Virus record (IMG/VR): IMGVR_UViG_3300033977_000108 | Span: 1 to 64,000 of that record | Length of the DNA stretch: 64,000 bases | Direction: 5' to 3' (one strand) | In this document: positions 9,558 to 32,405 of the stretch, piece after piece | Layout of the letters: every line of letters begins with the position of its first letter | Numbering within the stretch: position 1 is the first letter of the stretch | Notes under the pieces: model-generated | Database searches by the model: none | What the model was told of the DNA's origin: nothing | The model's input: the letters and a program-made list of their open reading frames with translations, nothing else | Translations under genes and position numbers: made by a program

Positions 9558-9935
9558 TTAGGACAGCTCTTCGAATGCCTTCGAGGCGCTGATGGAATAG
9601 GCACGGTTGGATGCCAGGAAGTCTCTCTTCCAAGTCCAGTCGTCCATAACATACCGCTGGACATCGGCTTCGGATAATTCCACTTCCTTGCGATTGTCCA
9701 GCTCCAAAGCCCTGATTACGCGGTCATAATCCTTTGTGTGGTCCTCTGGGATCGGCAGGCTAATATAGATAGTGGCCACTTTGCCAGCCCTCAAGTTGGC
9801 CAAGTGTAGCTCCAGTAAGTCAATGTTCTGCTGTTTGTAGCCCTTCAGGGCTTCCTCAAAGATTGCCCTATGAGCGGCTCTGTTCTCTTTCAGGATTTCC
9901 AAGAGCTTGCTTTTGCTCATTCTTATGTCCTTCAT
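9558..9935 (-). CDS. Conserved phage hypothetical protein, tandem paralog B2
   Basis: Paralog of 9075..9494; SD GGAGG. Confidence 0.85.
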   Translation of the reverse strand: MKDIRMSKSKLLEILKENRAAHRAIFEEALKGYKQQNIDLLELHLANLRAGKVATIYISLPIPEDHTKDYDRVIRALELDNRKEVELSEADVQRYVMDDWTWKRDFLASNRAYSISASKAFEELS

Positions 9936-10569
9936 TATTCTCCTCCAAGTGGAATAGTCCAAGTTCGGGAAGACCTATGAACCTGGTTCCTTCAAGCTTT
10001 ACATCTACTTCCTTATGATGATGACCAAAAATCCAAGTCGTAGGGTGCCAGGACCGCCACAAGTGGTCAAGGAACGTACTGGTAGCCGAACGTATTTTGC
10101 CGGGGCCGGTAACCCAGGGAGCGGCTTGTAAGAGGGAGTCTGGCGCCTCGTGTGATACCATTACAGCAGGTTCTATCTGCTGGTATAGAAAGAACGCCTC
10201 ATCCATTTGTGCCGAGGTCAGTTGCTCGTCTCTCCACCAGTCCACGCCTTCTACGCGATACGCCCTATCAACAGAGTAGCCGCCGCCAGCGTAAAACAAG
10301 TCCTTTCCCATTATGTAGCCAAACTCGCCCAGATAGTTGGGATGGCGTCGGCAATCCTCTGGCTTGTCATGGTTGCCGCGAATGAACTTATGCTGGCTCG
10401 GCAGCTCAGGCAGCTCTGCTCCTTGAAAGCCTTCGCCCACGATGTAGAGATTGATACCAAATCCTATGCCCATGTCCCCCACTTGCACCGATGGCTCACC
10501 CGCCGGTAAGCTGTTGATAATGCGCAAGTATCTGGCAAATTGTCCGTGGCAATCGCCAATAAATGTCAT
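9868..10569 (-). CDS. Calcineurin-like metallophosphoesterase
   Basis: GDCHG, VGDMG, RGNHD, VSHEAP, FGHHH motifs. Confidence 0.9.
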   Translation of the reverse strand: MTFIGDCHGQFARYLRIINSLPAGEPSVQVGDMGIGFGINLYIVGEGFQGAELPELPSQHKFIRGNHDKPEDCRRHPNYLGEFGYIMGKDLFYAGGGYSVDRAYRVEGVDWWRDEQLTSAQMDEAFFLYQQIEPAVMVSHEAPDSLLQAAPWVTGPGKIRSATSTFLDHLWRSWHPTTWIFGHHHKEVDVKLEGTRFIGLPELGLFHLEENNEGHKNEQKQALGNPEREQSRS

Positions 10570-10582
10570 AGTGTTGCTCCTG

Positions 10583-10849
10583 TTAGCTCTGTCCTTTTGC
10601 CAATGGCCCACCATCCAGGAGTATTCTGCCGTGCTTGTCTTGAAAGGCATTCATCTCCCGTAGCCATTCCCACACGCTCATGTCAGCGGTCTTTACCGCC
10701 ACATTAGGGCCCGCGCGCACGGCAAGCTCGGCACAGCTAATACAGAGGGCCATGGGAAAGCCACTGGCATTATAGCTTATCTCAACCATGTGGTTCTGGT
10801 CGGTGGTGTAAATACCGACTGATGTCGTGCTTTTCTTTACGGCGGCCAT
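10583..10849 (-). CDS. Hypothetical protein
   Basis: ORF track; CISC. Confidence 0.55.
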   Translation of the reverse strand: MAAVKKSTTSVGIYTTDQNHMVEISYNASGFPMALCISCAELAVRAGPNVAVKTADMSVWEWLREMNAFQDKHGRILLDGGPLAKGQS

Positions 10850-11990: not shown

Positions 11991-12202
11991 CGCTTTGCTC
12001 CTTTAGTAGCAATGGCCCCGGGCCGCTTCACCGGAAACTCAGCACATGCCTGTGCAGGATGGATACTAACCAGGTGATTAGCACCATCAAAATCGTGGGC
12101 GTAAACATCAGGATCACATAGACCACTGACTCGCCTGCGTCGCGCTCGTAAGATTTCCCGTTTTGTCCACCCTTTTTGTTTTCCTTCATGGGTAACCCCC
12201 AT
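11987..12202 (-). CDS. Hypothetical basic protein
   Basis: ORF track. Confidence 0.5.
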   Translation of the reverse strand: MGVTHEGKQKGWTKREILRARRRRVSGLCDPDVYAHDFDGANHLVSIHPAQACAEFPVKRPGAIATKGAKR

Positions 12203-12833
12203 TAGTTGCCTGCCGCACTGATACCGGGCCGCTGATTAAGGCTGGGATCCTACCAGTGGCTTTCAGCTTTCGCATTTCACTGGAGCATCTGGCAAGCACA
12301 GCCTTCTTATCCTTCAATCTCGCGCTGTCGAAAAACAAACCCCCGTCGAGGTGCGCAACCTCATGCTGGATAGCGTGGGCTAACACCCATGAATTCAGGT
12401 AGCCTGGGCTATGCCCCGCTACAACATGCATCAGGTTCCAGTCCTGGTCCCTGTATTGCAGTTCGACTACCAGGCTGCGCGCCACGTGGGCGCTGACCCC
12501 CGGGAAGCTAAGGCAGCCCTCTTCAACCACAATCCTGCCCTCCACAGAGAGTATCTCAGGATTATACATAAGAGGCAACCCTATCAGGTTTCCATCCCTG
12601 TCATAATGGTCGCTCTCTGTAAAGATGTTGAATGGCACGCAGAATCTTCTTGCGTCGCCCAATTGGATTCCCGCTAAATAATATCCATCGTTAGCTTTGC
12701 ACAGCTCGCTAATGTAGTCAATATACCACATTGGGAGCGGTCCATCCAGAGGCTTGGACTTCGTCCGCAGCAGCTCTATGTCAAAGCGGACGATTTTGAC
12801 CTCCCCTACATCGTAGGGCTGACTAATCGTCAT
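12186..12833 (-). CDS. def: Peptide deformylase (divergent motif 1)
   Basis: EGCLSFPG (motif 2), QHEVAHLDG (motif 3), YLAGIQLG (motif 1 variant). Confidence 0.88.
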   Translation of the reverse strand: MTISQPYDVGEVKIVRFDIELLRTKSKPLDGPLPMWYIDYISELCKANDGYYLAGIQLGDARRFCVPFNIFTESDHYDRDGNLIGLPLMYNPEILSVEGRIVVEEGCLSFPGVSAHVARSLVVELQYRDQDWNLMHVVAGHSPGYLNSWVLAHAIQHEVAHLDGGLFFDSARLKDKKAVLARCSSEMRKLKATGRIPALISGPVSVRQATNGGYP

Positions 12834-13913: not shown

Positions 13914-14072
13914 CTAGTCAGGGCTGGCAGCGTAGGCAACAAGTGCCCAAACAGCGCACATAGCAGCCCAGGCCGCAGCCAGCCAGTTGTGACGGGGAAT
14001 GGCCTGTACGCATACAAAGATGCCAGAAATCGCCACAATCGAGGCAGGGATTCTAATATCCTGCTTCTTCAT
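13914..14072 (-). CDS. Small two-TM membrane protein (52 aa)
   Basis: Own translation MKKQDIRIPASIVAISGIFVCVQAIPRHNWLAAAWAAMCAVWALVAYAASPD. Confidence 0.55.
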   Translation of the reverse strand: MKKQDIRIPASIVAISGIFVCVQAIPRHNWLAAAWAAMCAVWALVAYAASPD

Positions 14073-14517
14073 GCTCAGTCCCTTCTTTCTGCTTGATTGG
14101 TTTTGCCGCCGGCGGCTTGTGGTTTTCCTGTTGCCTGGCTGGCAAGACTTCTACCAGCACTTCCGCCAGGCCCTCGGCCTTGAAGCGCAGGACGACAGCA
14201 ACGCCCAGCGAAGCATCAAGTATTCTACCAGTTTTTGGGGATGGGCCTCTGTCATTCACGCGGGCAATGACAGAGCGTCCGTTTTCCAGATTGGTAATCC
14301 TAACCCACACGCCCATAGGCAGGTGCGGGCTGGCTACCGTCATGGCATACATGTTGAATGTTTCGCCGCTGTATGTCTCTTTGCCGTCCCATCCAGGGCC
14401 GTACCAGGAGGCTATACCCTGCTCTGCGCTGGCGGTGTTGGTCATAGCCACCGATTTGCTGCTGGCCGTGCTGGCCAGCAGATAGGATAGAAGGCACAGT
14501 ATAGCCAATCTTTTCAT
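14053..14517 (-). CDS. rlpA: RlpA-family (DPBB) lytic transglycosylase with signal peptide
   Basis: GIASWYG...SGE.FNMYAMT.AS..LP.G..VR.TNLENGRSV..RVNDRGP...RILD.S. Confidence 0.92.
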   Translation of the reverse strand: MKRLAILCLLSYLLASTASSKSVAMTNTASAEQGIASWYGPGWDGKETYSGETFNMYAMTVASPHLPMGVWVRITNLENGRSVIARVNDRGPSPKTGRILDASLGVAVVLRFKAEGLAEVLVEVLPARQQENHKPPAAKPIKQKEGTEHEEAGY

Positions 14518-15672: not shown

Positions 15673-16296
15673 CTACGCGGCAATCTCTTCGCCGGACTCC
15701 GGCCTGTCGAACAAAACGCTGCTGTTGATTGGGATGGCGTCGCTAATCGGGCCATCCGAGGCAGACACTCCTGGGTCTTCCGCCGACTCGTTGTCAAACA
15801 CGGCGGCAGGGGCGATGTCCCGATGGCCGACCAGCGCCAAGGACGGAGCCCCGTTCAGGCCGAACAGGTCAGCCCGGACCCAGGCGGAAGTCACGCCGCC
15901 ATACGGGAATTCATAGCCGCCAGGAACCTTCTTCGGATTGACAATCTTGAGGTTCAACAAGTCCCCACGCTGCAATCCAAGGCTCTTGACAGCTTCGATC
16001 ACTTCGGGCGCTTTGGTGAATACTTGCAGTGCCCGGCGCCGGCGTTGGAACGGCTTGGCTGGGTCGCCAGTCGGGTGGTAATAACGGGACCAGCCCACTT
16101 TCAGCTTCAGGAACGGCTCTCCGTCGTAGATGCCGCCGTTGTAAACGCCTTCCTCGACCGCAAACAGCGTGACATTGTACAAGTGGCCGATGTTGAACGG
16201 CTGCTTCCAGCTGTACTGGACGTCGTTCAACGTATCGTAGCGCAGGATGAGCGTCTCGTAAACACGCGGAATCCTCAATTGACTTGTGTTATCCAC
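15673..16296 (-). CDS. Hypothetical beta-rich protein with acidic tail (possible OB-fold nucleic-acid binder), paralog D1
   Basis: Shares G.PF..L..G..R, RR.LQ.F, GL.RGDLLNL, VPGG.E, VGHR.I.P with 20469..20960; acidic C-terminal tail. Confidence 0.75.
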   Translation of the reverse strand: MDNTSQLRIPRVYETLILRYDTLNDVQYSWKQPFNIGHLYNVTLFAVEEGVYNGGIYDGEPFLKLKVGWSRYYHPTGDPAKPFQRRRRALQVFTKAPEVIEAVKSLGLQRGDLLNLKIVNPKKVPGGYEFPYGGVTSAWVRADLFGLNGAPSLALVGHRDIAPAAVFDNESAEDPGVSASDGPISDAIPINSSVLFDRPESGEEIAA

Positions 16297-16329
16297 GGTA
16301 TCCTCCTTAGAGTTGATTTCAGGCTACTT

Positions 16330-17274
16330 TTACGCAGCCTGTCCTTGCTCTTGTGCTTCGGTGTCTTCACCTGCCACAACAGCAGGTGCAGGCATCTCTA
16401 CAACATTATCAGGCGCGGCCGGTGTAGCTTCCGCTCCGCCCTGCTCGGCAGGCACTGTCTGCTGTGCCGATGTAATGGCAGCGTACAGGGCACCCTCTTG
16501 GTACCCTTGTGCAGCACTACGCCAGAGGCGCAGCCAGTTCTTGAACTGCTCAAACAGCTCGACATAGATGGAGTTGTCCGAGCCTTTCTCGATGGCCTCC
16601 CTGGTCGCCGCCAAGGTCATGTGGATTGGAAACCACAAGTCTTTGCGGCTAACGCCAAGGATGGAGAACCACTTGGATAGTTTGCTGCCCAGGCCAACCC
16701 CAGGATAGCGACGCATCTCCTCCCGATTGGTCAGGTAGTCAAACATCTTCAGCTTCTCCTCTGGGCTGATCTGTTCTTCCATGATTTGAAGCACCTCTTC
16801 CTGTTGCTCTGGCGTGAAGACGCCATTGCGGCCCATCAGAGGCGCTGTGTGTTCAGGGCGCAAAGCCTTCTGCTCCCTGTATTTGCCGTGGCTCATGGCA
16901 ATACCTCCTCCAGGTGGAATCACCTGGACATTTGCTTCCATGCTACCCCTATAAAGCCCACAACGCTGGCATTTATTGGTGTAGCATTCCGTGGACTTTG
17001 ACCTGACATCAAAGCCCTCCTTACCGCGAACATAACCGGACCGGCATTCCACGGTCCAGTCATTACCTTTGCCCGTATAGAGCGTTCTGAATGCCGGGCA
17101 AAGCTCTCTGGCAGCGCCTCTCAGTTGCGAAACCATTGTGTGTAAAGCGCCTGAGAAGCGCTCAACGAACGGGCCGTTGTAGATGCCGCGCCCCAGCTCG
17201 TCGAGCAGCTGTCCACAATAAGTGGAAGTTGCTTCGACTTGCTCAAGTGCGACCATAGTAACGTCAGTATCCAC
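16330..17274 (-). CDS. Hypothetical protein (314 aa)
   Basis: Long ORF; SD AGGAGG; CQRC. Confidence 0.8.
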   Translation of the reverse strand: MDTDVTMVALEQVEATSTYCGQLLDELGRGIYNGPFVERFSGALHTMVSQLRGAARELCPAFRTLYTGKGNDWTVECRSGYVRGKEGFDVRSKSTECYTNKCQRCGLYRGSMEANVQVIPPGGGIAMSHGKYREQKALRPEHTAPLMGRNGVFTPEQQEEVLQIMEEQISPEEKLKMFDYLTNREEMRRYPGVGLGSKLSKWFSILGVSRKDLWFPIHMTLAATREAIEKGSDNSIYVELFEQFKNWLRLWRSAAQGYQEGALYAAITSAQQTVPAEQGGAEATPAAPDNVVEMPAPAVVAGEDTEAQEQGQAA

Positions 17275-17344
17275 TTCTTACCTCCTTTGGAATGCCACTG
17301 GTGCAACCAGTGGTTATTCGCATCCGTCCTGGCTTTCGTAGGTA

Positions 17345-17542
17345 TTACATCCTACCGCCGGCCAGGATGTAGAGAACGACAGGCCAGAGAAGTACGCCCT
17401 TGATATATTCAGACCTGCTGATATACATAGTCTTCACAGAATCCCAATGTATATCAGCCAGGCCCTCGACCACGAGCAGGCCTATACAAGTGTAAACAGC
17501 CAGCACAACAAAGAAGAAGAACAACCACAGACCATAGTTCAT
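17345..17542 (-). CDS. Small membrane protein
   Basis: LWLFFFFVVLAVYTCIGLLVV; SD AAAGGAGG. Confidence 0.7.
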   Translation of the reverse strand: MNYGLWLFFFFVVLAVYTCIGLLVVEGLADIHWDSVKTMYISRSEYIKGVLLWPVVLYILAGGRM

Positions 17543-17561
17543 GGCTTGGTCCTCCTTTATA

Positions 17562-17846
17562 GCAGAGCCAGTAATGTGGTTCGTCTATACCGTAGCCTAC
17601 TGTTGCTACCTAACGGTATGGCCTCTAGCCTACCCTAAAAGAACAGCAGCAGAGGAACTTATGTCCTAGACACATGGGTGTTTACTAAACAGGCACGACC
17701 AATCAGAGGCTCCTGTGGAGCTTGCTTGGAACGGTGTCCGTAAAGTGTATGCCCTTTGTTATCTGCGCTGTAGCTATTGGTGGCAAAGGTGAGGCCACCA
17801 GGCCTAAGTAACGACAGTAATATAGACGACGTATTACTGGCTCTGC
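17562..17846 (-). ncRNA. Large structured non-coding RNA candidate (about 285 nt, closed terminal stem)
   Basis: Terminal 14-bp plus 9-bp stem GCAGAGCCAGTAAT..TCGTCTATA / TATAGACGA..ATTACTGGCTCTGC; nested stems TACTGT/ACAGTA, TGGTGGC/GCCACCA, ACAGC-GCAGA/TCTGC-GCTGT, GGCAT/GTGCC, GCTCC/GGAGC. Confidence 0.75.
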
Positions 17847-17879
17847 AAGATTGTGGGCAGCGCGGAAACAACCGCCAAA

Positions 17880-18101
17880 TGATGGGGCCCTGTAAGATCA
17901 AAGGGGCGGCAGGAAGCCAGGTGGGTCGGCGGTGAGGTCCCCGGCTTCAACACATCCGCCCCTTGTAGGGGCAGGGGGACCAGCGAGGCGCTTGGCGCCT
18001 CAATCTGGCCCATCACCCGCCCCTAACTTGATGGGCTAGAACCAGTCTGCCGGGACTCGTAGGCCCTCCAACATAAGCAGACCCTCCTACGTTCTAGCCC
18101 A
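17880..18101 (-). ncRNA. Two stem-enclosed pseudoknot domains (putative ncRNA)
   Basis: TGGGCTAGAAC/GTTCTAGCCCA encloses crossing GTAGG/CCTAC and GTCTGC/GCAGAC; TGATGGG/CCCATCA encloses crossing GTCCCC/GGGGAC and AGGGGCGG/CCGCCCCT. Confidence 0.7.
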
Positions 18102-18107
18102 AGCTTA

Positions 18108-18719
18108 TCACTGCTTTGGCTCGCCGAACAGGTGCAGTTGAGCCTTTTGGTCAGGCGTGCAGGCACAAATGCAGGGGCCGCCTGTCAGATGTATGCGGCT
18201 GTTCTTGTCAGATCGGCGGACGGAGCGTCGGATACTCCCCCTCCTCTTGGCCACCGCCGTGCTGTGAATGTCCTCGTGGTAGTCGCAGTAGTGCTCGTAG
18301 TGTGTGAGTGGCCTCTCACAATGGACCATTCTACAGAGGCCTGCTGCCTTCCGCGCCGCCCTCCTGATTTGGCAGGTGGTCGGAATAGAAGCAGTGTAGA
18401 GATAGGACCTATCCCTCCGCCAGTTCCTGCCCTGTAGGTAATCAAGCCGGCTTTCATCCCATACGCGGACTGACAAACCGTACTTCTTTGATGGGATGGC
18501 GGCATCCCATAAGCGGAGAACGTGGTCGGCCAGGAAGCCCTCGTCCTCTACAATGTGGCCTCCTAAAATGTGGATAACCGAATGTATCTCCGCGTCCTTT
18601 CCTACAGGCCCGGACTGCGGCAGGCCGCGGCCAGAAGCCTGCCAGACCCAGATGGTGCGCTCGGTCAAGGTAAGCAACACGGCAGTCTTGCTGTTGGAGA
18701 TGCCGATTAGTCTAGGCAT
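18108..18719 (-). CDS. Hypothetical protein with Cys/His-rich C-terminus
   Basis: SD AAGGAGG before MPRL; CRMVHC..YCDYH. Confidence 0.65.
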   Translation of the reverse strand: MPRLIGISNSKTAVLLTLTERTIWVWQASGRGLPQSGPVGKDAEIHSVIHILGGHIVEDEGFLADHVLRLWDAAIPSKKYGLSVRVWDESRLDYLQGRNWRRDRSYLYTASIPTTCQIRRAARKAAGLCRMVHCERPLTHYEHYCDYHEDIHSTAVAKRRGSIRRSVRRSDKNSRIHLTGGPCICACTPDQKAQLHLFGEPKQ

Positions 18720-18990
18720 TGAGCACCTCCTTATAGGCAAGCAGAGTGACCACTGGCGGAACGACTTTGATCTTACCGCGGTCGCTCCTGTCCAGTGCCA
18801 TAGAATCCTTAGGCATAAGCTGGCGTGGATTTCCTTTCTCGTCGCGCACGATCCCCAACTCCTTGTCATCCAGCATCAGCTTGTAGCCGCGGGACAAAGC
18901 ACGCCGTAAGTAGCTGAAACCACGGCGTTTCTTGAGGTTGGCTGCCCTACGTCGCTCTTCTCTCAGCTGGGCAGCTTGGTTGTCAGTCAT
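18712..18990 (-). CDS. Hypothetical basic protein
   Basis: SD AGGAGG before MTDNQ. Confidence 0.65.
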   Translation of the reverse strand: MTDNQAAQLREERRRAANLKKRRGFSYLRRALSRGYKLMLDDKELGIVRDEKGNPRQLMPKDSMALDRSDRGKIKVVPPVVTLLAYKEVLNA

Positions 18991-19174
18991 GTTTCCTCCT
19001 TGGGGCGGCTCGCAGCCATTCTTCGTATCCCGCCTGTAGGATGGCACATGTTTCAGAGCAGTAGAGGCTGTTAGGCTTGGCGACATTCAAGCCGCAGTAA
19101 AGACAGAACTCTACCGATTTCTTCTTGCTTTCCTTCTCTTTCTCTTTCCTCTTGCGTTCCCTTGCATCAAGCAT
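18983..19174 (-). CDS. Zinc-finger protein (CxxCG...YCSxxC)
   Basis: FCLYCG..LYCSETC; SD GGAGG. Confidence 0.65.
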   Translation of the reverse strand: MLDARERKRKEKEKESKKKSVEFCLYCGLNVAKPNSLYCSETCAILQAGYEEWLRAAPRRKHD

Positions 19175-19254
19175 AGGGACACCTCCATTCGGAAGTAGCT
19201 GGCCCATCGGTGCAACCAGCGGCCACAACCCATTGGCTGGATTGCGGTCGCCGA

Positions 19255-19614
19255 CTACTCCTCTGGTATGTCTTCAATGCGTTCAATACACTGCTCTTCG
19301 GTTAGGCTCTCATTGGCCACCCAGGCCAGAACCTCGGCATGGCAGAGCTCTGGGGCGCACCAGCAGCCGAGAGTCTGTCCTCGCAGCTCACGCCTTGCCT
19401 TCTCCACAAGCCCAGGCGTTTCAAAGAGATAGCGGGTGAATAGCATAAGAACAGTCTTGCGGTTCTTTACATTGTCGTGCCCCAGATGGTAGGGGTTGTG
19501 GAAGTCAGATTGAGTGAAATTCCCGTGCCTGGAACAGTGCCGCCTGCCAACATAGACACAAGGCTGCTTAGAGCGGATATTGATGACGAGTGGGTGTTGT
19601 TCGCGCATCGTCAA
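19255..19614 (-). CDS. DUF4326-domain protein
   Basis: VYVGR..F.NPY..G..R..V...F..YL..ARRELRG.TLGCWCAP..CHAEVL. Confidence 0.85.
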   Translation of the reverse strand: MTMREQHPLVINIRSKQPCVYVGRRHCSRHGNFTQSDFHNPYHLGHDNVKNRKTVLMLFTRYLFETPGLVEKARRELRGQTLGCWCAPELCHAEVLAWVANESLTEEQCIERIEDIPEE

Positions 19615-19772
19615 CCTCCTATCTCTACCATTTCATAACCGTGCTCGGTTAGAAACAGTTCAAACGTGTTGTAGACGTCCTCCGCATACATAAGAGGCGT
19701 CGGGTCAGAGTACTGAGACAGAAAGCTCTCAATGGTAAGACGCAAGAGCAGTCTAATCATTTCTTTATTCAT
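19611..19772 (-). CDS. Hypothetical protein
   Basis: SD GGAGGAG before MNKEM. Confidence 0.6.
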   Translation of the reverse strand: MNKEMIRLLLRLTIESFLSQYSDPTPLMYAEDVYNTFELFLTEHGYEMVEIGG

Positions 19773-19840
19773 TGACTCCTCCTTTCTTCGGTTGGGCTGG
19801 TGGGGACGGAGGGGCTTGAATTCCATCCCCATCAAGCTTA

Positions 19841-20185
19841 TCAGAGATTGCCTTTCAGGCTCTTATCAAGCCAGTAGCGTAGAACGCCGATGGCTTTGGC
19901 GGCCTTTCTGGCATAGTCTGTGTCGCCCTTCTGCGCCTGGTGGTTGGCTACCCAGACAAACTCGTAGAACTTACGGGCAGTGTCGCGGCTCAGCTCAAAG
20001 AAAACCATCACTGGGACATTATGCCGCCAGGCGAGCTGCTCATCAATACCAGACTGCAAGCGGTCAGTGGTGATGTGGCAGGCTCTGACGATTTCAGCAT
20101 TCGTCTCCGACGATTTTGCGGCTTCCTTGAGATACTGGGTCAAAAAGGCCGCGTATTGTCGTGATGCTTCTATCTTGATTTTCAC
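19841..20185 (-). CDS. Hypothetical helical protein
   Basis: SD AAAGGAGG, GTG start. Confidence 0.7.
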   Translation of the reverse strand: MKIKIEASRQYAAFLTQYLKEAAKSSETNAEIVRACHITTDRLQSGIDEQLAWRHNVPVMVFFELSRDTARKFYEFVWVANHQAQKGDTDYARKAAKAIGVLRYWLDKSLKGNL

Positions 20186-22799: not shown

Positions 22800-24449
22800 C
22801 TACTTACGCTTCCAGCCCGCCGAGGTCTTCAAGGCATACAACATACCTCTAGCCTCTTTCTGGCTGGTTGTCCCTGCCAGCCTCTCAGAGTACATCAAGA
22901 GGCCGGCTTCAGACTGCGACGGATGAAAACGGATAAAGTTGCCCTTCAGGATAGCTCCTGTCGGTCCCCTGCCTTGGGTAGTCACTTCAGCCACATCACC
23001 CTTCAGCAGGTCCCTATTCCGCCACATCCAATCCCTATACTCGTCGGGGATGGCAAAACTGCCTATCTCCCCAACGCCACTGCCTGTCCTTACATCCAGC
23101 GGCTGGACAAGAATACCACCCAATGTGCCCTTATACTTGCCAGCCCCCTCAATGAAATCAAGGACTTCCACATCAATCGTATCCCTGGCCTTGCCTTTAT
23201 AAACCAGGTCTATGGCTCTGCCATCCACCGGCTTCACCATAATCCCTTCAGACCAAGGCAGCCCTCTTGGATCATTCACCACAAGCTCATAATAAGCCTC
23301 CAGTGGCATCCAGCCGGGCTTACGCTCAACGATGTGGACATGCTTGTTGAATGGCCTTATCCCAGCGACCGCTTCTTCCATCATCGCCCGCCGCTCAGAA
23401 TACGGTAAGTTACTGACATTCTTACCTTTATACTTCAGAATGTCAGTCACATAAGCCTCAATCGGCCCATGCTCCCGCTGATAACCAATAGCCTTATCAG
23501 CTCCGCTGTTCAGCAGACCGCCCAGCCTACTGGCGCCGTCCTTGTGGAACAGCTCCACTCTGAACAGAGTGCCATGCATCTCCGGCTTGAACAATAGCCG
23601 ATCCAGCAACACATGGCTCCTATTCTGCAGCCATTCAAGAGCAGGCAGCTTGAATGTATAGCATGGAACATCCCGCCAGCTTTGAAAGATAGCTCTTTCC
23701 AACCCTTCTCTGCTGGTGCTTTCAATAGCCATGGATGCCATACTACCATCCATCTTACGCTCAACGATAACTCCTTTAGGGTCAAGGCTTGCCAGCCATT
23801 CCAGTGCTTTCAGAGCAGCCTTTGGCTTGGGAACCATCACCCCTCTGTCCTTCATCCTAACCAGAAGGCCTCGTCCTTTCTCCATGCCTTCTGGCCGGCG
23901 GACAGAATACGAACCCTTGAACTCACCACGGGGTATGTTAAAATCGAACTCCCGGGTACCGGGCTTTATGCCAACAGCCACAAAGTCCCAATGCCTCCCT
24001 GCCACCTCGGCATCGTGCTGATGTATGTTCGCCTTGGCGACACTCAGCCTATCGCCAACCTTCAAGACAATGTCTTCCTTATACAAGAGCTTCTTCATGC
24101 CCTTGCCTCGGCCCTCGCCTATCAAGCCGCTGAAATCATTGACTTTATGCGGCTCGTCTTCCCCTACCAGCACAGGACTACCCGTCTTCGTAGGAAACGG
24201 CTTGGCTCCTCGACGGGGCAGCAGATGAAGCTTCTCGTAATGATTGGCACCAGGCCCACTAACCAGCCTGCCGTCTATATCGCTCTTCGACAGCAGCCTG
24301 GCAGACAATAGTCTGGTAGCAGGCTTTACTTTGACCGCGGCAACGGATGAAAGCATACCCATGCCAGCATCCCAGAAAGTGTTCCAGCATACCTTGGACA
24401 AAGCAGCCGCACCATCAAGAATAGCGGTAATTCGTTTCCTAATACCCAC
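22800..24449 (-). CDS. lig: ATP-dependent DNA ligase with LigD phosphoesterase-like N-terminal region
   Basis: ERKMDG (I), FRVELF (III), YVTDILKYKG..LPYSERR (IIIa), SEGIMVK (IV), YKGK (V), OB domain GAGKYKGTLGGILV; N-terminal HQHDA..GRHWDF. Confidence 0.88.
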   Translation of the reverse strand: MGIRKRITAILDGAAALSKVCWNTFWDAGMGMLSSVAAVKVKPATRLLSARLLSKSDIDGRLVSGPGANHYEKLHLLPRRGAKPFPTKTGSPVLVGEDEPHKVNDFSGLIGEGRGKGMKKLLYKEDIVLKVGDRLSVAKANIHQHDAEVAGRHWDFVAVGIKPGTREFDFNIPRGEFKGSYSVRRPEGMEKGRGLLVRMKDRGVMVPKPKAALKALEWLASLDPKGVIVERKMDGSMASMAIESTSREGLERAIFQSWRDVPCYTFKLPALEWLQNRSHVLLDRLLFKPEMHGTLFRVELFHKDGASRLGGLLNSGADKAIGYQREHGPIEAYVTDILKYKGKNVSNLPYSERRAMMEEAVAGIRPFNKHVHIVERKPGWMPLEAYYELVVNDPRGLPWSEGIMVKPVDGRAIDLVYKGKARDTIDVEVLDFIEGAGKYKGTLGGILVQPLDVRTGSGVGEIGSFAIPDEYRDWMWRNRDLLKGDVAEVTTQGRGPTGAILKGNFIRFHPSQSEAGLLMYSERLAGTTSQKEARGMLYALKTSAGWKRK

Positions 24450-24822
24450 GCCGTCTCCTCCTTTCTCTGTAATTCATGATGACATCCTTGCTAACTATGC
24501 CAATAACCGCAGCTGCCATCAAGCTCAGCAGCTCTATAGCCCAGTTAGCTAAATGCCCTAGACTGATGGCGATAGCGCAGGTAAGCACCCCCAGCATGTA
24601 CTTGCTGTGCAATTTGAGATGCCCGCTAATCCAGATGACAATCATACTTACCAGCAGAGCCGGAGCATAGGCAGCCATCAACACTATTACCGCCGCCTCT
24701 ATCAGGCTCTTGACCACGTTCCACTTCCAGCTCTGATACTTACCATCCCAGAAGAAGTTCTTCAGAGCCAGAAGTCCAAACAAGCCTGCTATCAGGCTTA
24801 TGTACAAGGCTCGTCTGGTCAT
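24439..24822 (-). CDS. Multi-TM membrane protein
   Basis: Three to four hydrophobic helices; SD AAGGAGG. Confidence 0.75.
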   Translation of the reverse strand: MTRRALYISLIAGLFGLLALKNFFWDGKYQSWKWNVVKSLIEAAVIVLMAAYAPALLVSMIVIWISGHLKLHSKYMLGVLTCAIAISLGHLANWAIELLSLMAAAVIGIVSKDVIMNYRERRRRRGY

Positions 24823-24873
24823 ACACTTACCTCCTTTCAGAGCGGCTTTGTAGTCGCTCGGAAGTGGGCTCCG

Positions 24874-25143
24874 TCAATACAAAGCCCACTCCCCAGACCC
24901 TACAACACAATCCTGTCTGGTCAGAGCCTTGGAGAACCTGCCATAATCCAGGTCCTCCAGGTCATAATCAACAACTACCATGACCCTATCCCAATCCACA
25001 AAAGCTATGAGATAGTAATGATGGCCGTTCTTGAAACAATACCACCTGCCATCATCCTGCAACTCATAGCCTTGAAGAGAGATAGTCCTAAGAAACCAAG
25101 GCGGAAGGCGGTCTAACACCGCCTTCCGTTCAATGGTAGTCAT
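24874..25143 (-). CDS. Hypothetical protein
   Basis: ATGA coupling. Confidence 0.65.
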   Translation of the reverse strand: MTTIERKAVLDRLPPWFLRTISLQGYELQDDGRWYCFKNGHHYYLIAFVDWDRVMVVVDYDLEDLDYGRFSKALTRQDCVVGSGEWALY

Positions 25144-25316
25144 TGTGGATCAACCACTGACCCCTGGAACCAGCTGCCAACCTTGCTGAATACAGGAGAC
25201 AGCTTGGTAACAACAGCAGCCCGGTCCTGCGCATAACTGCGGCCAGACAGGGCATACCAAACAATAACCCCTGCCGCAGCTGCTACACCGAGCAGAACTG
25301 CTACTCCAGTCTTCAT
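25140..25316 (-). CDS. Small membrane protein (58 aa)
   Basis: Own translation MKTGVAVLLGVAAAAGVIVWYAL...; SD AAGGAGG. Confidence 0.65.
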   Translation of the reverse strand: MKTGVAVLLGVAAAAGVIVWYALSGRSYAQDRAAVVTKLSPVFSKVGSWFQGSVVDPQ

Positions 25317-25615
25317 CGGTCACCTCCTTTCTTCGGTCTGTAGGGCACGTACTTGCCGTCTACAGCTCTTCCAATATACCGATTAGTACGCTGGTCCATC
25401 AACTGATAGACCTGGTGGCCCTCCCTGGCCAAACGAGCCCAAACAGAGGTCTTATTAGGATTCTGCTGGACTAGCTTGGCAGGGCCACGCCTAAACGGCA
25501 TATTCTCCAACTGCCTGAGATGTTGCTTGGATGTATAGGTAATGGGCTGAGCCCATTCACCTACCCGTACGACGACCTGGTTCATCTGCTGCAAGCACGA
25601 AGTCAAGAAGCCCAT
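25313..25615 (-). CDS. Hypothetical protein
   Basis: SD GGAGG before MGFLT. Confidence 0.65.
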   Translation of the reverse strand: MGFLTSCLQQMNQVVVRVGEWAQPITYTSKQHLRQLENMPFRRGPAKLVQQNPNKTSVWARLAREGHQVYQLMDQRTNRYIGRAVDGKYVPYRPKKGGDR

Positions 25616-31400: not shown

Positions 31401-31754
31401 ATTAGGATCACGGACATAACTAACGACCCTGAACCAGCGGCTATTGTCCGCAGGAACAAACACACCTTGGGCTGACTTCAGAAAAGCCCTCGCCATTGCG
31501 AAGTTCTCTTCTGTAATGCGCTCAGCCTCAGAAGTATTGCCTATTCCTTTGGCAACAGAAAGGCGGGAATAAGGAATCCCCGCATGTTCCAGGAACGGGC
31601 TCCAGGCAGCTGGACCGATACACTTCTTCGGATCCAGTTTCTGGCCTGGAACCTGGGGCAGCAAATAGCTACACTTACCATCACTGCCCATAGAGACCGT
31701 CCACCTAAGATTAGGTGGCCTTATCACTTGTTGAATATTTGTAGGCGTTTTCAT
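28482..31754 (-). CDS. Putative single-subunit two-barrel RNA polymerase (YonO/QDE-1-like) with C-terminal HIRAN-like segment
   Basis: AGQAYCSARFAKRM (cf. DG.G.IS..LA), GMMKANVLVV (cf. G.KG.L.V), IRNP...D.R...A..HP.L..L....IF...GDCDDSDIFIFDP (cf. R.P...GGD.DGD...WD); C-terminal VKLKPTLYEGEPAVEVF...HVGWITK. Confidence 0.7.
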   Translation of the reverse strand: MKTPTNIQQVIRPPNLRWTVSMGSDGKCSYLLPQVPGQKLDPKKCIGPAAWSPFLEHAGIPYSRLSVAKGIGNTSEAERITEENFAMARAFLKSAQGVFVPADNSRWFRVVSYVRDPNGLSGVMIDRHLPSAEAWRLFGLDIPEFKPDIPKRLQRLLAPHPYALFGKEVGRYRLNEFDEVIKVKLEEGGTLDILFAPPSGRWPDWRVAGQAYCSARFAKRMLHRKSASPGDLFAITGLMSPGMMKANVLVVRDMKNVDLIVYEPKSSVRAWDGNVFLGVLSEKHGSPARTDIQTAINFELAHALDGKFFEILTDEYMGRIFKELEEEDLTGLKQSIGFYKPMDFEEIVDERGETEIRPIRATIEDWKVWKLLESGVKGLNRMPGFRRARRLSALRMKGFDHDPGRARIGFRVPARLDDPHGDFRACALRGHLTADPTAFDGWGRPKPEGGVLKPGQCYFGGFVGQGTLIRNPNGSRNDARFLDAISHPALRALDKEATCIFIHPDYPKPVKGQDVGDCDDSDIFIFDPAINAFLRALPAFNVKFRPEEAVVEPVPRRFTKAIEKPSYDEDVICDMLGKLKESRLGIGCAVNTELWYIDIFNNYSLVMDTLRAMPQNEKIKAAIAWMEKDFWESEMPMVCGETQRIIDSSKQTGLPIDREQAACSSFRRECPVAGAWMWEGGWEGRGRIPVSRLGTPDEPIPIPTPISAELEAWRHRYAQAVEEAKAEDWSHIWRVPPEMESFQVSDSAARLANQAQVYYNGLLQTKKNEFLAAHKDHRDRVIMTEDEAAISAYFFAEERVHSFIMASGLATEVYVALARNIYNNLPHPTSDKEIPRNEGAEMDLREVRDGILYGKHTVDGFIMALRACGLTTKRTPFRWYDRAVTKDSFENDYGQVREQVVVEKTDYDPTGMTFRIKGTTAHLHNAIGELIEPLSEGEYTLDHGFLLVSDKPETPPCGASSGLTVRVVDGWETKLKAATGDKRAELEQARRQFIAMAGSVVKLKPTLYEGEPAVEVFSETDQHVGWITKDTLIHLFPWITDPAVGEVRGALAWHIGSSGTSPYALDLRLYVPLKVLNQGVPDAGKEVNNG

Positions 31755-31873
31755 ACGCCTACCTCCTCTCTACTTACACAGCAGGCAATGCCTTAGCCTC
31801 TCACAGCTTGGCATTGCATGTGGACAGTTAAGTCCTGACTGCCCAAGGACTTATGCCCTTGGGCAGCAGGGAA

Positions 31874-32113
31874 TCAACCCTCCAATGCTGCTGAGTCCCC
31901 AGGTATAAGTCGATGGTAGAACCCACGACCATAACATGAACCAAAGCTGGTCAGAAGCTCCAACTTAACTACTACATACCCTGGGTTCTCAGCAGCATAA
32001 TTATGCAGCACCTGCCGAGCACAGGCCTCATCAAGTTCAAGAACAACATACGTTTCCTCAGCAGTCTCACCTTCCCAGCTGAAAACCACACGAAATACGA
32101 AATAGGTAAGCAC
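31874..32113 (-). CDS. Early hypothetical protein
   Basis: SD GAGGAGG. Confidence 0.65.
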   Translation of the reverse strand: MLTYFVFRVVFSWEGETAEETYVVLELDEACARQVLHNYAAENPGYVVVKLELLTSFGSCYGRGFYHRLIPGDSAALEG

Positions 32114-32201
32114 AGCTCACCTCCTCATAACATGTTGAATTTAACAACAGTGCCTAATTTGGCACATCCCAAGCCTTCTGTCACTAGGCTTGGGTCTACC
32201 A

Positions 32202-32405
32202 TCAGGCTCTATCAATAGGACTCTCACAGCTTGTCAATAAACTTATTGACAAGCCAGCCAAGAACACCCGCCAAACCAATGACTGCCAATTTGCCATACC
32301 AAGGCAGCCATAGGCAGGCACACCAAAAGACGAACAAAACAACGACACAAATAACAACAGAGAGAAAAGATACAATACGGTCCATGTTAAGTTCTCCTTT
32401 TTCAT
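32202..32405 (-). CDS. Early membrane protein
   Basis: TM WTVLYLFSLLLFVSLFCSSFGV. Confidence 0.5.
   Translation of the reverse strand: MKKENLTWTVLYLFSLLLFVSLFCSSFGVPAYGCLGMANWQSLVWRVFLAGLSISLLTSCESPIDRA

What the first reader, a model, noticed from the sequence alone, without database searches (positions are those of the whole stretch)
17880..18101. Two stem-enclosed pseudoknots with a duplicated AGGGGCGG that allows conformational switching
Seen (minus strand): domain 18032-18101 has an 11-bp stem enclosing crossing GTAGG/CCTAC and GTCTGC/GCAGAC. Domain 17880-18015 has TGATGGG/CCCATCA enclosing crossing GTCCCC/GGGGAC and AGGGGCGG/CCGCCCCT, plus GAAGCC/GGCTTC. AGGGGCGG occurs twice and has two possible partners (CTGCCCCT and CCGCCCCT). 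Together with the 17562-17846 element this gives about 540 nt of non-coding folded RNA. Inference: a ribozyme, a riboswitch-like module, or the 5' domains of one large ncRNA.
Basis: partly seen in the sequence, partly recalled or inferred. Interest (0 to 1): 0.72.

Follow-up and report, generated by a model that had tools for sequence, protein, structure and literature searches.

The report
Conserved phage leader hairpin, variable neighbours
In a 565-base non-coding stretch of an uncultivated 205-kb peat phage, only the first ~70 bases are a conserved RNA hairpin that matches no described RNA family, while the proposed "switching pseudoknot" domain is better read as two ordinary tandem hairpins that related phages lack.

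Summary
The stretch 17543-18107 (minus strand) is non-coding in all six frames and folds better than shuffles (z -5.9).

Domain 1 (18100-18033) is a real, selected element. Near-identical copies occur in four related metagenomic phage contigs. It is 87-88% identical between lineages whose flanks align at only ~50%. It is 98.5-100% identical within a group whose flanking genes are 80-95% identical. Its outer stem covaries. Its inner 48 nt are almost invariant. It matches no Rfam family.

One pair is broken in 2 of 4 distinct sequences, and that variable base fits an alternative nested fold.

Domain 2 (18015-17880) is not a pseudoknot module. Relatives carry either an unrelated 107-nt hairpin or nothing at this place.

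So there is no conserved 540-nt RNA. There is one new conserved ~70-nt motif followed by lineage-specific hairpins. I infer a cis-acting processing or translational-control element. This is not shown.

The parts
18033..18100 (-). Domain 1 (D1): the conserved 68-nt hairpin module. Outer stem P1 is 18100-18091 with 18042-18033, plus a U18101-A18032 closing pair. The core is 48 nt.
   Evidence: Covariance model R1 scores 97.7 bits here and 91.6-91.9 bits in L003, L013, L014 and L015. It is a single copy in the 204.6-kb genome. P1 covaries. There is no Rfam match.
18084..18090 (-). A 7-nt 5' bulge, G(U/C)AGGAG, carrying a Shine-Dalgarno-like AGGAGG (18088-18083). Its second base is the only variable core position outside the apical loop.
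Evidence: Alignment A6. The base is U in the window and L015, and C in L003, L013 and L014.
18044..18083 (-). Inner helix P2 (18083-18076 with 18051-18044; six invariant WC pairs flanked by G.U and U.G) and its 24-nt apical loop (18075-18052). The first 9 nt of the loop vary; the last 15 are invariant.
   Evidence: P2 never varies, so it is neither supported nor refuted by covariation. The G.U pairs fit the minus strand only.
18036..18074 (-). Mini-ORF inside D1. The start codon is AUG here and UUG in relatives, 8 nt after the AGGAGG. It has 12 codons here and 19 or 29 in relatives.
   Evidence: Read. Nine shared codons show no synonymous change, so the constraint is at nucleotide level. Whether it is translated is unknown.
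18101..18108 (-). 5' linker AUAAGCUU. It overlaps the last base of the upstream stop codon.
   Evidence: The same 8-9 nt word (AUHAAGYUU) flanks D1 on both sides in the window and in L003/L015, and flanks the extra hairpin of L003/L015. It is not enriched genome-wide.
18025..18032 (-). 3' linker AUCAAGUU between D1 and hairpin H2.
17966..18025 (-). Hairpin H2, closed by UAGGGGCGG / CUGCCCCUA.
   Evidence: MFE fold. Not present in any relative.
17901..17965 (-). Hairpin H3, closed by AAGGGGCGG / CCGCCCCUU with the inner GAAGCC/GGCUUC helix. It is a diverged tandem copy of H2.
   Evidence: MFE fold. The H2-H3 alignment scores 42 against shuffles at 19.4 +/- 6.8, with 0 of 500 as high.
17880..17886 (-). 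It is unpaired in the MFE fold.
   Evidence: Forcing this stem costs 7 kcal/mol (-72.5 against -79.5).
17562..17846 (-). A 285-nt rod-like hairpin closed by a perfect 14-bp stem. It ends 5 nt before the Shine-Dalgarno sequence of the next gene.
   Evidence: I2, I11. Single copy. No counterpart in relatives.
17345..17542 (-). A 65-aa two-helix membrane protein gene (Shine-Dalgarno AAGGAGG at 17557-17551). It is the first gene downstream of D1 in every locus.
   Evidence: Weak BLASTP match to the 72-aa ORF of L003 (E 0.012) plus conserved gene order. The protein atlas places it among small phage membrane proteins.
16330..17274 (-). A 314-aa Cys-rich protein gene. It served as the synteny anchor that led to the related contigs.
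   Evidence: P0003 (E 8e-28) and P0004. No Pfam or PHROG match. The structure model has low confidence, pLDDT 42.
18108..18869 (-). Upstream ORF (called product 203 aa). It has no homologue, and it is not the gene that lies upstream of D1 in relatives.

Best explanation
The 565-nt gap is a modular leader inside a minus-strand gene cluster of a 204.6-kb phage with direct terminal repeats. Only its first module, D1 (18100-18033), is conserved and under selection.

**Anatomy of D1**
- A 10-11 bp outer stem whose sequence is free to covary.
- A near-invariant 48-nt interior.
- The interior can fold in two ways:
  - Fold A: one long inner helix. A Shine-Dalgarno-like AGGAG sits in a 7-nt bulge and a start codon sits in the apical loop.
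  - Fold B: a three-way junction in which the AGGAG is partly paired.
- The two folds lie within 0.4-2.6 kcal/mol of each other.

**The rest of the leader**
- They are gained, lost and duplicated in this interval.

**Most likely role (inferred, not shown)**
- D1 acts in cis on the polycistronic transcript, at the head of a conserved operon: small membrane protein, then a Cys-rich 306-314 aa protein, then a 190-207 aa protein.
- I propose it is a sequence-specific recognition element for a protein, a nuclease or the ribosome.
- It would set mRNA processing or stability, or local translation.
- It would not be a ligand-sensing switch coupled to a nearby expression platform.
For: **Shown**
- The stretch is non-coding and structured.
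- D1 is found in L003, L013, L014 and L015 at 91.6-91.9 bits.
- D1 is 87-88% identical to those copies, while the flanking ORFs and leader align at only 13-54%.
- Within the L003 group D1 is 98.5-100% identical, against 80-95% for the neighbouring genes.
- P1 keeps pairing through one A-U to G-C exchange and one lost base pair.
- G.U pairs at both ends of P2 fit the gene-sense strand.
- Nine shared codons of the mini-ORF show no synonymous change, so the constraint is on nucleotides.
- D1 always precedes the small membrane-protein gene. The upstream gene differs between lineages.
- The distance to the downstream gene is 66, 179 or 490 nt. This argues against a coupled expression platform.
- Domain 2 folds as H2 + H3 at -79.5 kcal/mol. 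H2 and H3 are related.
- L013 and L014 lack the 107-nt hairpin that L003 and L015 carry at the same place.
- Other intergenic stretches of this phage are also packed with hairpins.
Against: - There are only four distinct D1 sequences from two lineages, all from a few metagenomes of which at least one is peat. Covariation rests on essentially one deep comparison.
- There are no transcript data. No RNA run was listed, so the strand, the RNA ends and any processing are all unproven.
- No partner protein, nuclease site or ligand was identified.
- A scan for a consistent base-pairing target found none.
- Near-identity could partly reflect recent exchange between co-occurring phages. The peat run that holds this genome also holds an L003-type copy.
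- The interior fold (A or B) is undecided, because the core hardly varies.
Confidence: 0.4

Rival explanations
1. D1 is a new class of ligand-binding riboswitch aptamer or small self-cleaving ribozyme. The invariant core would form a tertiary pocket or active site, and the variable stem would only close it.
For: The conservation pattern is the one typical of aptamers and small ribozymes: a covarying closing stem around about 40 invariant core nucleotides. The two interior folds are near-isoenergetic. A crossing 5 + 6 bp pair is rare in shuffles, 13 of 2000. A ribozyme would explain why the distance to the next gene does not matter.
Against: No Rfam family matches, even at E up to 10. There is no conserved terminator or sequestering helix after D1, and the spacing to the gene varies from 66 to 490 nt. 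The only candidate tertiary helix is broken in 2 of 4 distinct sequences. No cleavage or ligand data exist.
Confidence: 0.12
2. D1 and the other hairpins are small mobile or recombination cassettes (MITE-like: terminal inverted repeat plus short flanking direct repeat). D1 would be near-identical between phages because it spread or was exchanged recently, not because the phage needs it.
For: D1 has 9-11 bp terminal inverted arms. The 107-nt hairpin of L003/L015 has 10-11 bp arms. Both are flanked by the 8-9 nt word AUHAAGYUU. L013 and L014 show an 'empty site' with a single copy of that word. Both phage types occur in the same peat run. MITEs shared between prokaryotes and viruses have been described (PMC11602168, title and abstract seen).
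Against: In D1 the arms vary while the interior is frozen, the reverse of what a transposase-recognised element shows. D1 is a single copy per genome. No further copies of D1 or of the 107-nt hairpin turned up in the viral, metagenome or genome scans. D1 sits at the same syntenic place in both lineages, which fits inheritance. The changes in D1 are clustered rather than uniform: P1 and a 9-nt loop segment vary, and only 1 other position in the remaining 39 nt of the core varies. The flanking word is kept in a lineage whose other intergenic sequence is unalignable, which suggests it is itself functional.
Confidence: 0.15
3. D1 is a translated leader (a uORF with its own Shine-Dalgarno sequence). 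Ribosome traffic through the hairpin would remodel the downstream leader, and the overlap of coding and structural constraints would freeze the sequence.
For: AGGAGG is followed after 8 nt by AUG (window) or UUG (relatives) at the same column. Both lie in single-stranded parts of fold A. The first 11 codons are shared. The phage's own genes use the same strong Shine-Dalgarno sequence.
Against: The ORF is 12, 19 or 29 codons long with unrelated tails. It ends far from the next start codon, so there is no coupling. The 8-nt spacer is the 5' strand of P2. Given the conserved UG, 3 of 4 possible bases at the first codon position give a start codon, so start-codon 'conservation' is weak evidence. 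There are no synonymous changes at all, which points to RNA-level constraint.
Confidence: 0.1
4. One reading: two stem-enclosed pseudoknots, with switching through the duplicated AGGGGCGG, form the 5' domains of one ~540-nt ncRNA, ribozyme or riboswitch.
For: All named complementary strings exist. The whole region folds better than shuffles.
Against: The domain 2 scheme is at least 20 kcal/mol worse than the tandem-hairpin fold. Domain 2 and the 285-nt rod are absent from all relatives. The domain 1 crossing helix is not maintained. No Rfam match.
Confidence: 0.05
5. D1 works at DNA level, for example as a single-strand hairpin or a recombination or replication site, rather than as RNA.
For: Inverted arms flanking a conserved core, with short direct repeats outside. 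The plus strand also folds well (z -4.5).
Against: Conserved G.U pairs at both ends of P2 would be A.C mismatches on the other strand. The site lies inside a co-oriented gene cluster, away from the GC-skew turn near 32-34 kb. No recombinase or replication gene was recognised nearby.
Confidence: 0.05

Closest known systems
Intercistronic RNase III processing hairpins of T7-like phage early transcripts (e.g. R1.1); from my own knowledge, not tested here
   Same: About 60-70 nt. Two stems of about 10 bp are separated by an asymmetric internal loop. The hairpin is placed just after a stop codon inside a polycistronic phage transcript. Its function does not depend on the distance to the next gene.
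   Different: D1 has an invariant 7-nt bulge and an invariant 15-nt loop segment, which RNase III recognition does not require. No cleavage data exist and the host is unknown.
Riboswitch aptamers and small self-cleaving ribozymes (Rfam classes such as twister, pistol, hatchet, guanidine-III, preQ1)
   Same: A variable closing stem around a highly conserved core, with possible alternative folds.
   Different: No family matches, at gathering score or at E up to 10. There is no expression platform. The candidate pseudoknot is not maintained.
Prokaryotic and viral MITEs and REP-like hairpin insertions (PMC11602168)
   Same: This applies to the accessory hairpins: terminal inverted arms, short flanking direct repeats, a presence/absence polymorphism between close relatives (L003/L015 against L013/L014), and tandem duplication (H2/H3).
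   Different: They are single copy in every genome seen. No copies were found elsewhere. No transposase was identified. For D1 the interior, not the arms, is conserved.
Cis-acting phage antitermination RNAs (HK022 put) and leader-peptide attenuators; from my own knowledge, not tested here
   Same: A short structured element early in a phage operon, competing helices, and in the attenuator case a Shine-Dalgarno sequence plus a short ORF inside the structure.
   Different: No terminator-like hairpin with a U-tract follows. No sequence relationship was tested. The uORF length is not conserved.

Membership tests
Any Rfam 15 family (ribozymes, riboswitches, tmRNA, RNase P, GOLLD/ROOL, group I/II introns) | A covariance-model score at or above the family's gathering threshold | tested here: not met
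   There are 0 matches in the 64-kb window at gathering score. In 17200-18400 there are only chance-level hits, at most 20 bits with E at least 1.7.
tRNA / tmRNA | A cloverleaf or tRNA-like domain detectable by ARAGORN | tested here: not met
   0 genes in the window.
   GUCUGC/GCAGAC is invariant, so it is uninformative. GUAGG/CCUAC has pair 12-41 as U-A in 2 distinct sequences and C.A in the other 2. The variable base fits the alternative nested helix 11-15/20-24 as C-G or U.G.
The nested MFE is -79.5 kcal/mol. The best fold with the UGAUGGG/CCCAUCA stem forced is -72.5.
   No similarity beyond D1 was found in L003, L013, L014 or L015.
Riboswitch | An aptamer followed by a conserved expression platform (terminator or Shine-Dalgarno-sequestering helix) at fixed spacing | tested here: not met
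   The spacing to the gene is 66, 179 or 490 nt. There is no terminator-like site on the minus strand. The apparent anti-P1 sequence lies inside a hairpin that L013/L014 lack.
Riboswitch | Specific ligand binding | not testable with these tools
   This needs in-line probing or calorimetry.
Self-cleaving ribozyme | Site-specific self-scission | not testable with these tools
   This needs an in-vitro transcription and cleavage assay. No known class matched.
MITE | Terminal inverted repeats | tested here: met
   D1 has 9-11 bp arms, the L003/L015 hairpin 10-11 bp, H2 and H3 8-9 bp, and the rod 14 bp.
MITE | A target-site duplication flanking the element | tested here: inconclusive
   Imperfect 8-9 nt direct repeats (AUHAAGYUU) flank D1 and the L003/L015 hairpin, and L013 has a single copy at the empty site. 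Deletion between pre-existing repeats explains this equally well.
MITE | Multiple copies in a genome or in other genomes | tested here: not met
   Single copy in the 204.6-kb genome. No other copies in the viral-contig scans.
Intrinsic terminator | A G+C-rich hairpin followed by a U-tract | tested here: not met
   No minus-strand terminator-like site in 16000-20000. D1 is followed by AUCAAGUU.

The most novel reading that the evidence does not exclude
D1 is the founding member of a new class of small catalytic or ligand-sensing RNA carried by large peat phages. It would be a bistable ~70-nt module whose invariant core toggles between a long-helix fold that exposes a Shine-Dalgarno sequence and start codon, and a three-way-junction fold that hides them. 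It would thereby cleave or gate the early polycistronic transcript.
Probability: 0.1. Interest if true: 0.75.

Novelty: new variant of a known kind. Interest (0 to 1): 0.42.

Why it matters
- If D1 is functional, it adds a phage-specific structured RNA family with no relative in Rfam. It comes from a very poorly sampled lineage of large soil and peat phages in which almost every neighbouring protein is an orphan.
- Its conservation is far above that of the flanking genes, so it is a tractable entry point into the regulation of that operon.
- The result also carries a caution. Runs of stable hairpins with shared arms generate many 'crossing' complementarities that look like pseudoknots or switches. 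One presence/absence comparison with a relative was enough to separate the conserved module from the variable hairpins.

Tried and rejected
- **Known RNA families.** Rfam at gathering score and at E up to 10 and ARAGORN found nothing.
- **Coding, or another genetic code.** All six frames carry mixed TAA, TAG and TGA stops, while the genome has long table-11 ORFs. No recoding is indicated.
- **Repeat family within the genome.** BLAST and model R1 find a single copy. The linker word is not enriched.
- **Promoter or terminator.** None on the minus strand near the element.
- **Cultured phages.** No similarity.
- **Relatives through flanking proteins in IMG/VR.** None, apart from one 6.9-kb contig found through the terminase, which has no D1.
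- **Pattern scans.** Viral contigs gave none. JGI metagenomes gave 3 chance hits. The 185,579 species genomes gave 4 chance hits inside high-GC coding DNA.
- **Model R1 on possible hosts.** No match in 151 genomes sampled from the phylum of L009, a MAG labelled Solibacteraceae.
- **Transcript evidence.** No RNA run was listed. The one DNA run is kept only as contigs. It shows the source contig plus a 110-nt L003-type D1 contig.
- **Function from neighbours.**
  - Pfam and PHROGs were empty for the flanking ORFs and for the ORFs of the related contigs.
  - The AlphaFold model of the 314-aa protein has pLDDT 42 and was not searched further.
  - Atlas hits were uninformative.
- **Trans or cis base-pairing target of the D1 loop or bulge.** No target position recurs across loci.
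- **Conserved anti-P1 'switching' sequence downstream of D1.** One is present in the window and in L003, but in L003 it lies inside the hairpin that L013/L014 lack. I rejected it as a conserved feature.
- **Retron, DGR or guide-RNA ideas.** No reverse transcriptase or nuclease domain was found in the neighbours.

Full report
**Context**

The window is the first 64 kb of a 204,633-bp virus record with direct terminal repeats, estimated complete. A peat metagenome run holds it in one piece.

Genes from about 1 to 32 kb lie on the minus strand and structural genes on the plus strand. The finding sits in a 565-nt gap (17543-18107) between three minus-strand ORFs:
- an orphan ORF at 18108-18869, whose called product is 203 aa and which has no homologue among 5.8 billion proteins;
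- a 65-aa two-helix membrane protein gene at 17345-17542, with a strong Shine-Dalgarno sequence;
- a 314-aa Cys-rich ORF at 16330-17274.

**Checking the observation**

The gap has 6-11 stops of all three kinds in each of the six frames, so it is non-coding under the code this genome uses.

| Stretch | z-score against dinucleotide shuffles |
|---|---|
| Whole 566 nt, minus strand | -5.9 (-240.3 kcal/mol) |
| Whole 566 nt, plus strand | -4.5 |
| Domain 2 with flanks | -3.45 |
| Domain 1 alone | -1.8 |

A crossing pair of Watson-Crick helices of at least 5 and at least 6 bp arises in 13 of 2000 shuffles of the 48-nt loop of domain 1.

No Rfam family matches, either at gathering score over the whole window or at E up to 10 over 17200-18400. 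No tRNA or tmRNA was found. No terminator- or promoter-like site lies on the minus strand nearby. The region is unique in the genome.

**Finding relatives**

The flanking proteins are nearly orphans. An exhaustive profile-free search with the 314-aa protein found one other cluster, P0003, at 35% identity. A word-based search with the alignment added P0004.

- P0003 lies on a 3.4-kb ENA contig, L003. Reading its upstream region showed a near-copy of domain 1 just after the stop codon of an unrelated 111-aa gene. An unrelated 107-nt hairpin follows, and then a 72-aa membrane-protein gene.
- BLASTN between the two loci finds domain 1 as by far the best match, 87% over 68 nt (E 4e-16). Protein-coding DNA is barely detectable.
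- Homologues of the 72-aa protein led to three more contigs: L013 (JGI), L014 and L015.
- A covariance model built from the two copies (R1) scores 91.6-97.7 bits in all five loci. It finds nothing else in the 204.6-kb genome, in the other fetched loci, or in 151 genomes sampled from the phylum of L009, a MAG labelled Solibacteraceae.
- Pattern scans of IMG/VR, JGI metagenome contigs and the species genomes gave only chance hits.
- The peat run that holds this genome also holds a 110-nt contig of the L003 type at depth 30.

**Domain 1 (D1) is under selection**

| Comparison | D1 identity | Flanking sequence identity |
|---|---|---|
| Window vs L003 group | 87-88% | 51-54% (ORFs); rest of leader 13-33% |
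| Within the L003 group | 98.5-100% | 80-95% (neighbouring genes) |

L003 and L013 share 66 of 66 D1 bases, while their flanking genes differ at 12-16% of positions.

The differences between lineages are clustered.
- The outer stem P1 changes GGGCUAGAAC/GUUCUAGCCC into GGGCUGGAC/GUCCAGCCC. That is one A-U to G-C exchange plus the loss of one base pair on both arms.
- Four of the five core differences fall in a 9-nt stretch of the apical loop.
- The fifth is the second base of the bulge, U or C.
- The nine codons shared by a possible mini-ORF carry no synonymous change, so the constraint is on the nucleotides.
- G.U pairs at both ends of the inner helix fit the gene-sense strand.

**The pseudoknot in D1**

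I counted pairs on the model-guided alignment of 4 distinct sequences.

| Helix | Result |
|---|---|
| P1 | Keeps pairing through changes on both sides |
| GUCUGC/GCAGAC (P2) | Never varies, so uninformative |

RNAalifold prefers a nested three-way junction (fold B). In it, bases 11-15 pair with 20-24, and the variable base forms C-G or U.G. Bases 29-33 pair with 52-56.

Fold A is the long P2 helix with a 7-nt bulge. Constrained folding puts fold A and fold B within 0.4-2.6 kcal/mol of each other in all three variants. Fold A is favoured in the window and fold B in L003. The interior fold is therefore undecided. Bistability is possible, and the crossing helix has no comparative support.

**Domain 2**

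With that copy included, the region folds into two consecutive hairpins at -79.5 kcal/mol:
- H2 (18025-17966), closed by UAGGGGCGG/CUGCCCCUA;
- H3 (17965-17901), closed by AAGGGGCGG/CCGCCCCUU.

Forcing the UGAUGGG/CCCAUCA stem gives -72.5 kcal/mol at best.

H2 and H3 align with each other in direct orientation far better than shuffles do: score 42 against 19.4 +/- 6.8, with 0 of 500 shuffles as high. The duplicated AGGGGCGG is therefore the shared arm of a tandem duplication. It is not a switch element.

No relative has anything resembling H2, H3 or the 285-nt rod.

**A variable interval**

- L003 and L015 carry a 107-nt hairpin with 10-11 bp terminal arms between D1 and the membrane-protein gene. 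L013 and L014 lack exactly this hairpin.
- The filled site has the word AUUAAG(C)UU on both sides. The empty site has one copy, AUUUAGUU.
- The same word flanks D1 in all lineages, as AUAAGCUU and AUCAAGUU in the window. It is not enriched elsewhere in the genome.
- Two histories fit this pattern: insertion with a target duplication, or deletion between functional linker repeats.
- Because the word survives in a lineage whose other intergenic sequence is unalignable, I lean towards a functional linker, for example a cleavage site. This is inference.

A genome-wide fold scan shows that hairpin-rich intergenic stretches are common in this phage. The stretch 31700-32210 has z -9.8 and 24820-25320 has z -7.05, both on the minus strand. 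The '540 nt of folded RNA' is therefore not special in itself.

**Mechanism**

The following is shown:
- D1 is a conserved, single-copy, sense-strand hairpin module.
- It has a covarying stem and a frozen core.
- It always heads the same operon, at a variable distance from it.

The following is inferred:
- D1 acts in cis as a sequence-specific recognition element for processing, stability or translational control. Its architecture resembles the intercistronic processing hairpins of T7-type early transcripts: two ~10-bp stems around an asymmetric internal loop, just after a stop codon. Here there is in addition an invariant bulge carrying AGGAG and an invariant loop segment.
- A coupled riboswitch is unlikely, because no expression platform is conserved.
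- A new ribozyme or aptamer, a translated leader, and a mobile or recently exchanged cassette all remain open at lower probability.

**Novelty and verdict**

D1 is a credible new structured RNA motif with a very narrow known distribution: two lineages of uncultivated phages. Its function is unknown. The rest of the finding is ordinary hairpin-rich leader sequence. Interest is moderate, at 0.42. It would rise sharply if self-cleavage, ligand binding or a defined processing role were demonstrated.

Noticed in passing
window 31700-32210 (-) and 24820-25320 (-); genome 147951-148200 (+), outside the window: Other stretches of this phage fold even more strongly than the finding, as chains of long near-perfect hairpins. 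The z-scores against shuffles are -9.8 and -7.05. In a genome-wide scan of 200-nt windows the third stretch scores -5.7.
   Followed up: partly
L003:1240-1442 and L007:353-566: A second structured leader lies in front of the 306/312-aa gene of the relatives. Its closing stem shows a compensatory change, CAUUACUGCUG/CAGCAGUAAUG against CAUUGCUGCUG/CAGCAGCAAUG. The fold z-scores are -5.2 and -3.5.
   Followed up: partly
L003:601-609 and 689-697: The 107-nt accessory hairpin of L003 contains CCUCCUCCU. This is perfectly complementary to the AGGAGGAGG Shine-Dalgarno region of the 72-aa gene 80 nt downstream, so it is a possible anti-Shine-Dalgarno sequence. In L015 both sides differ and the match is not clearly kept.
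   Followed up: partly
window 18061-18083 and 17460-17482: A 23-nt stretch of D1 (the P2 5' strand plus the loop) is 78% identical to a stretch inside the 65-aa gene. Both read ...EGL... in frame. This is probably chance, and it is not seen in relatives.
   Followed up: partly
window 18004-18015 and 18029-18040: The 3' arm of P1 plus CCCAUCA can pair with UGAUGGGCCAGA of hairpin H2 (12 nt, 92% complementary). This would be an anti-P1 alternative. The analogous pairing in L003 lies inside the hairpin that L013/L014 lack.
   Followed up: yes
window 12186-12833 (-), 14053-14517 (-), 9868-10650 (-), 19255-19614 (-), 22800-24449 (-): These are the recognisable genes near the finding: a polypeptide deformylase, a DPBB/RlpA-like lytic transglycosylase domain, a metallophosphoesterase, a DUF4326 protein, and a weak ATP-dependent DNA ligase match. 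Most other ORFs have no family.
   Followed up: no
run X1, record 2, laid on window 18041-18092: The peat run that holds this genome also holds a 110-nt contig (depth 30) with the L003-type D1 and its upstream flank. Two D1-bearing phage lineages therefore co-occur in one sample.
   Followed up: partly
JGI contig Ga0314861_0062540 (L013): This JGI contig matches the pattern used in the metagenome-contig scan, but the scan did not return it. That collection is therefore incomplete for this family, and absence from it means little.
   Followed up: no
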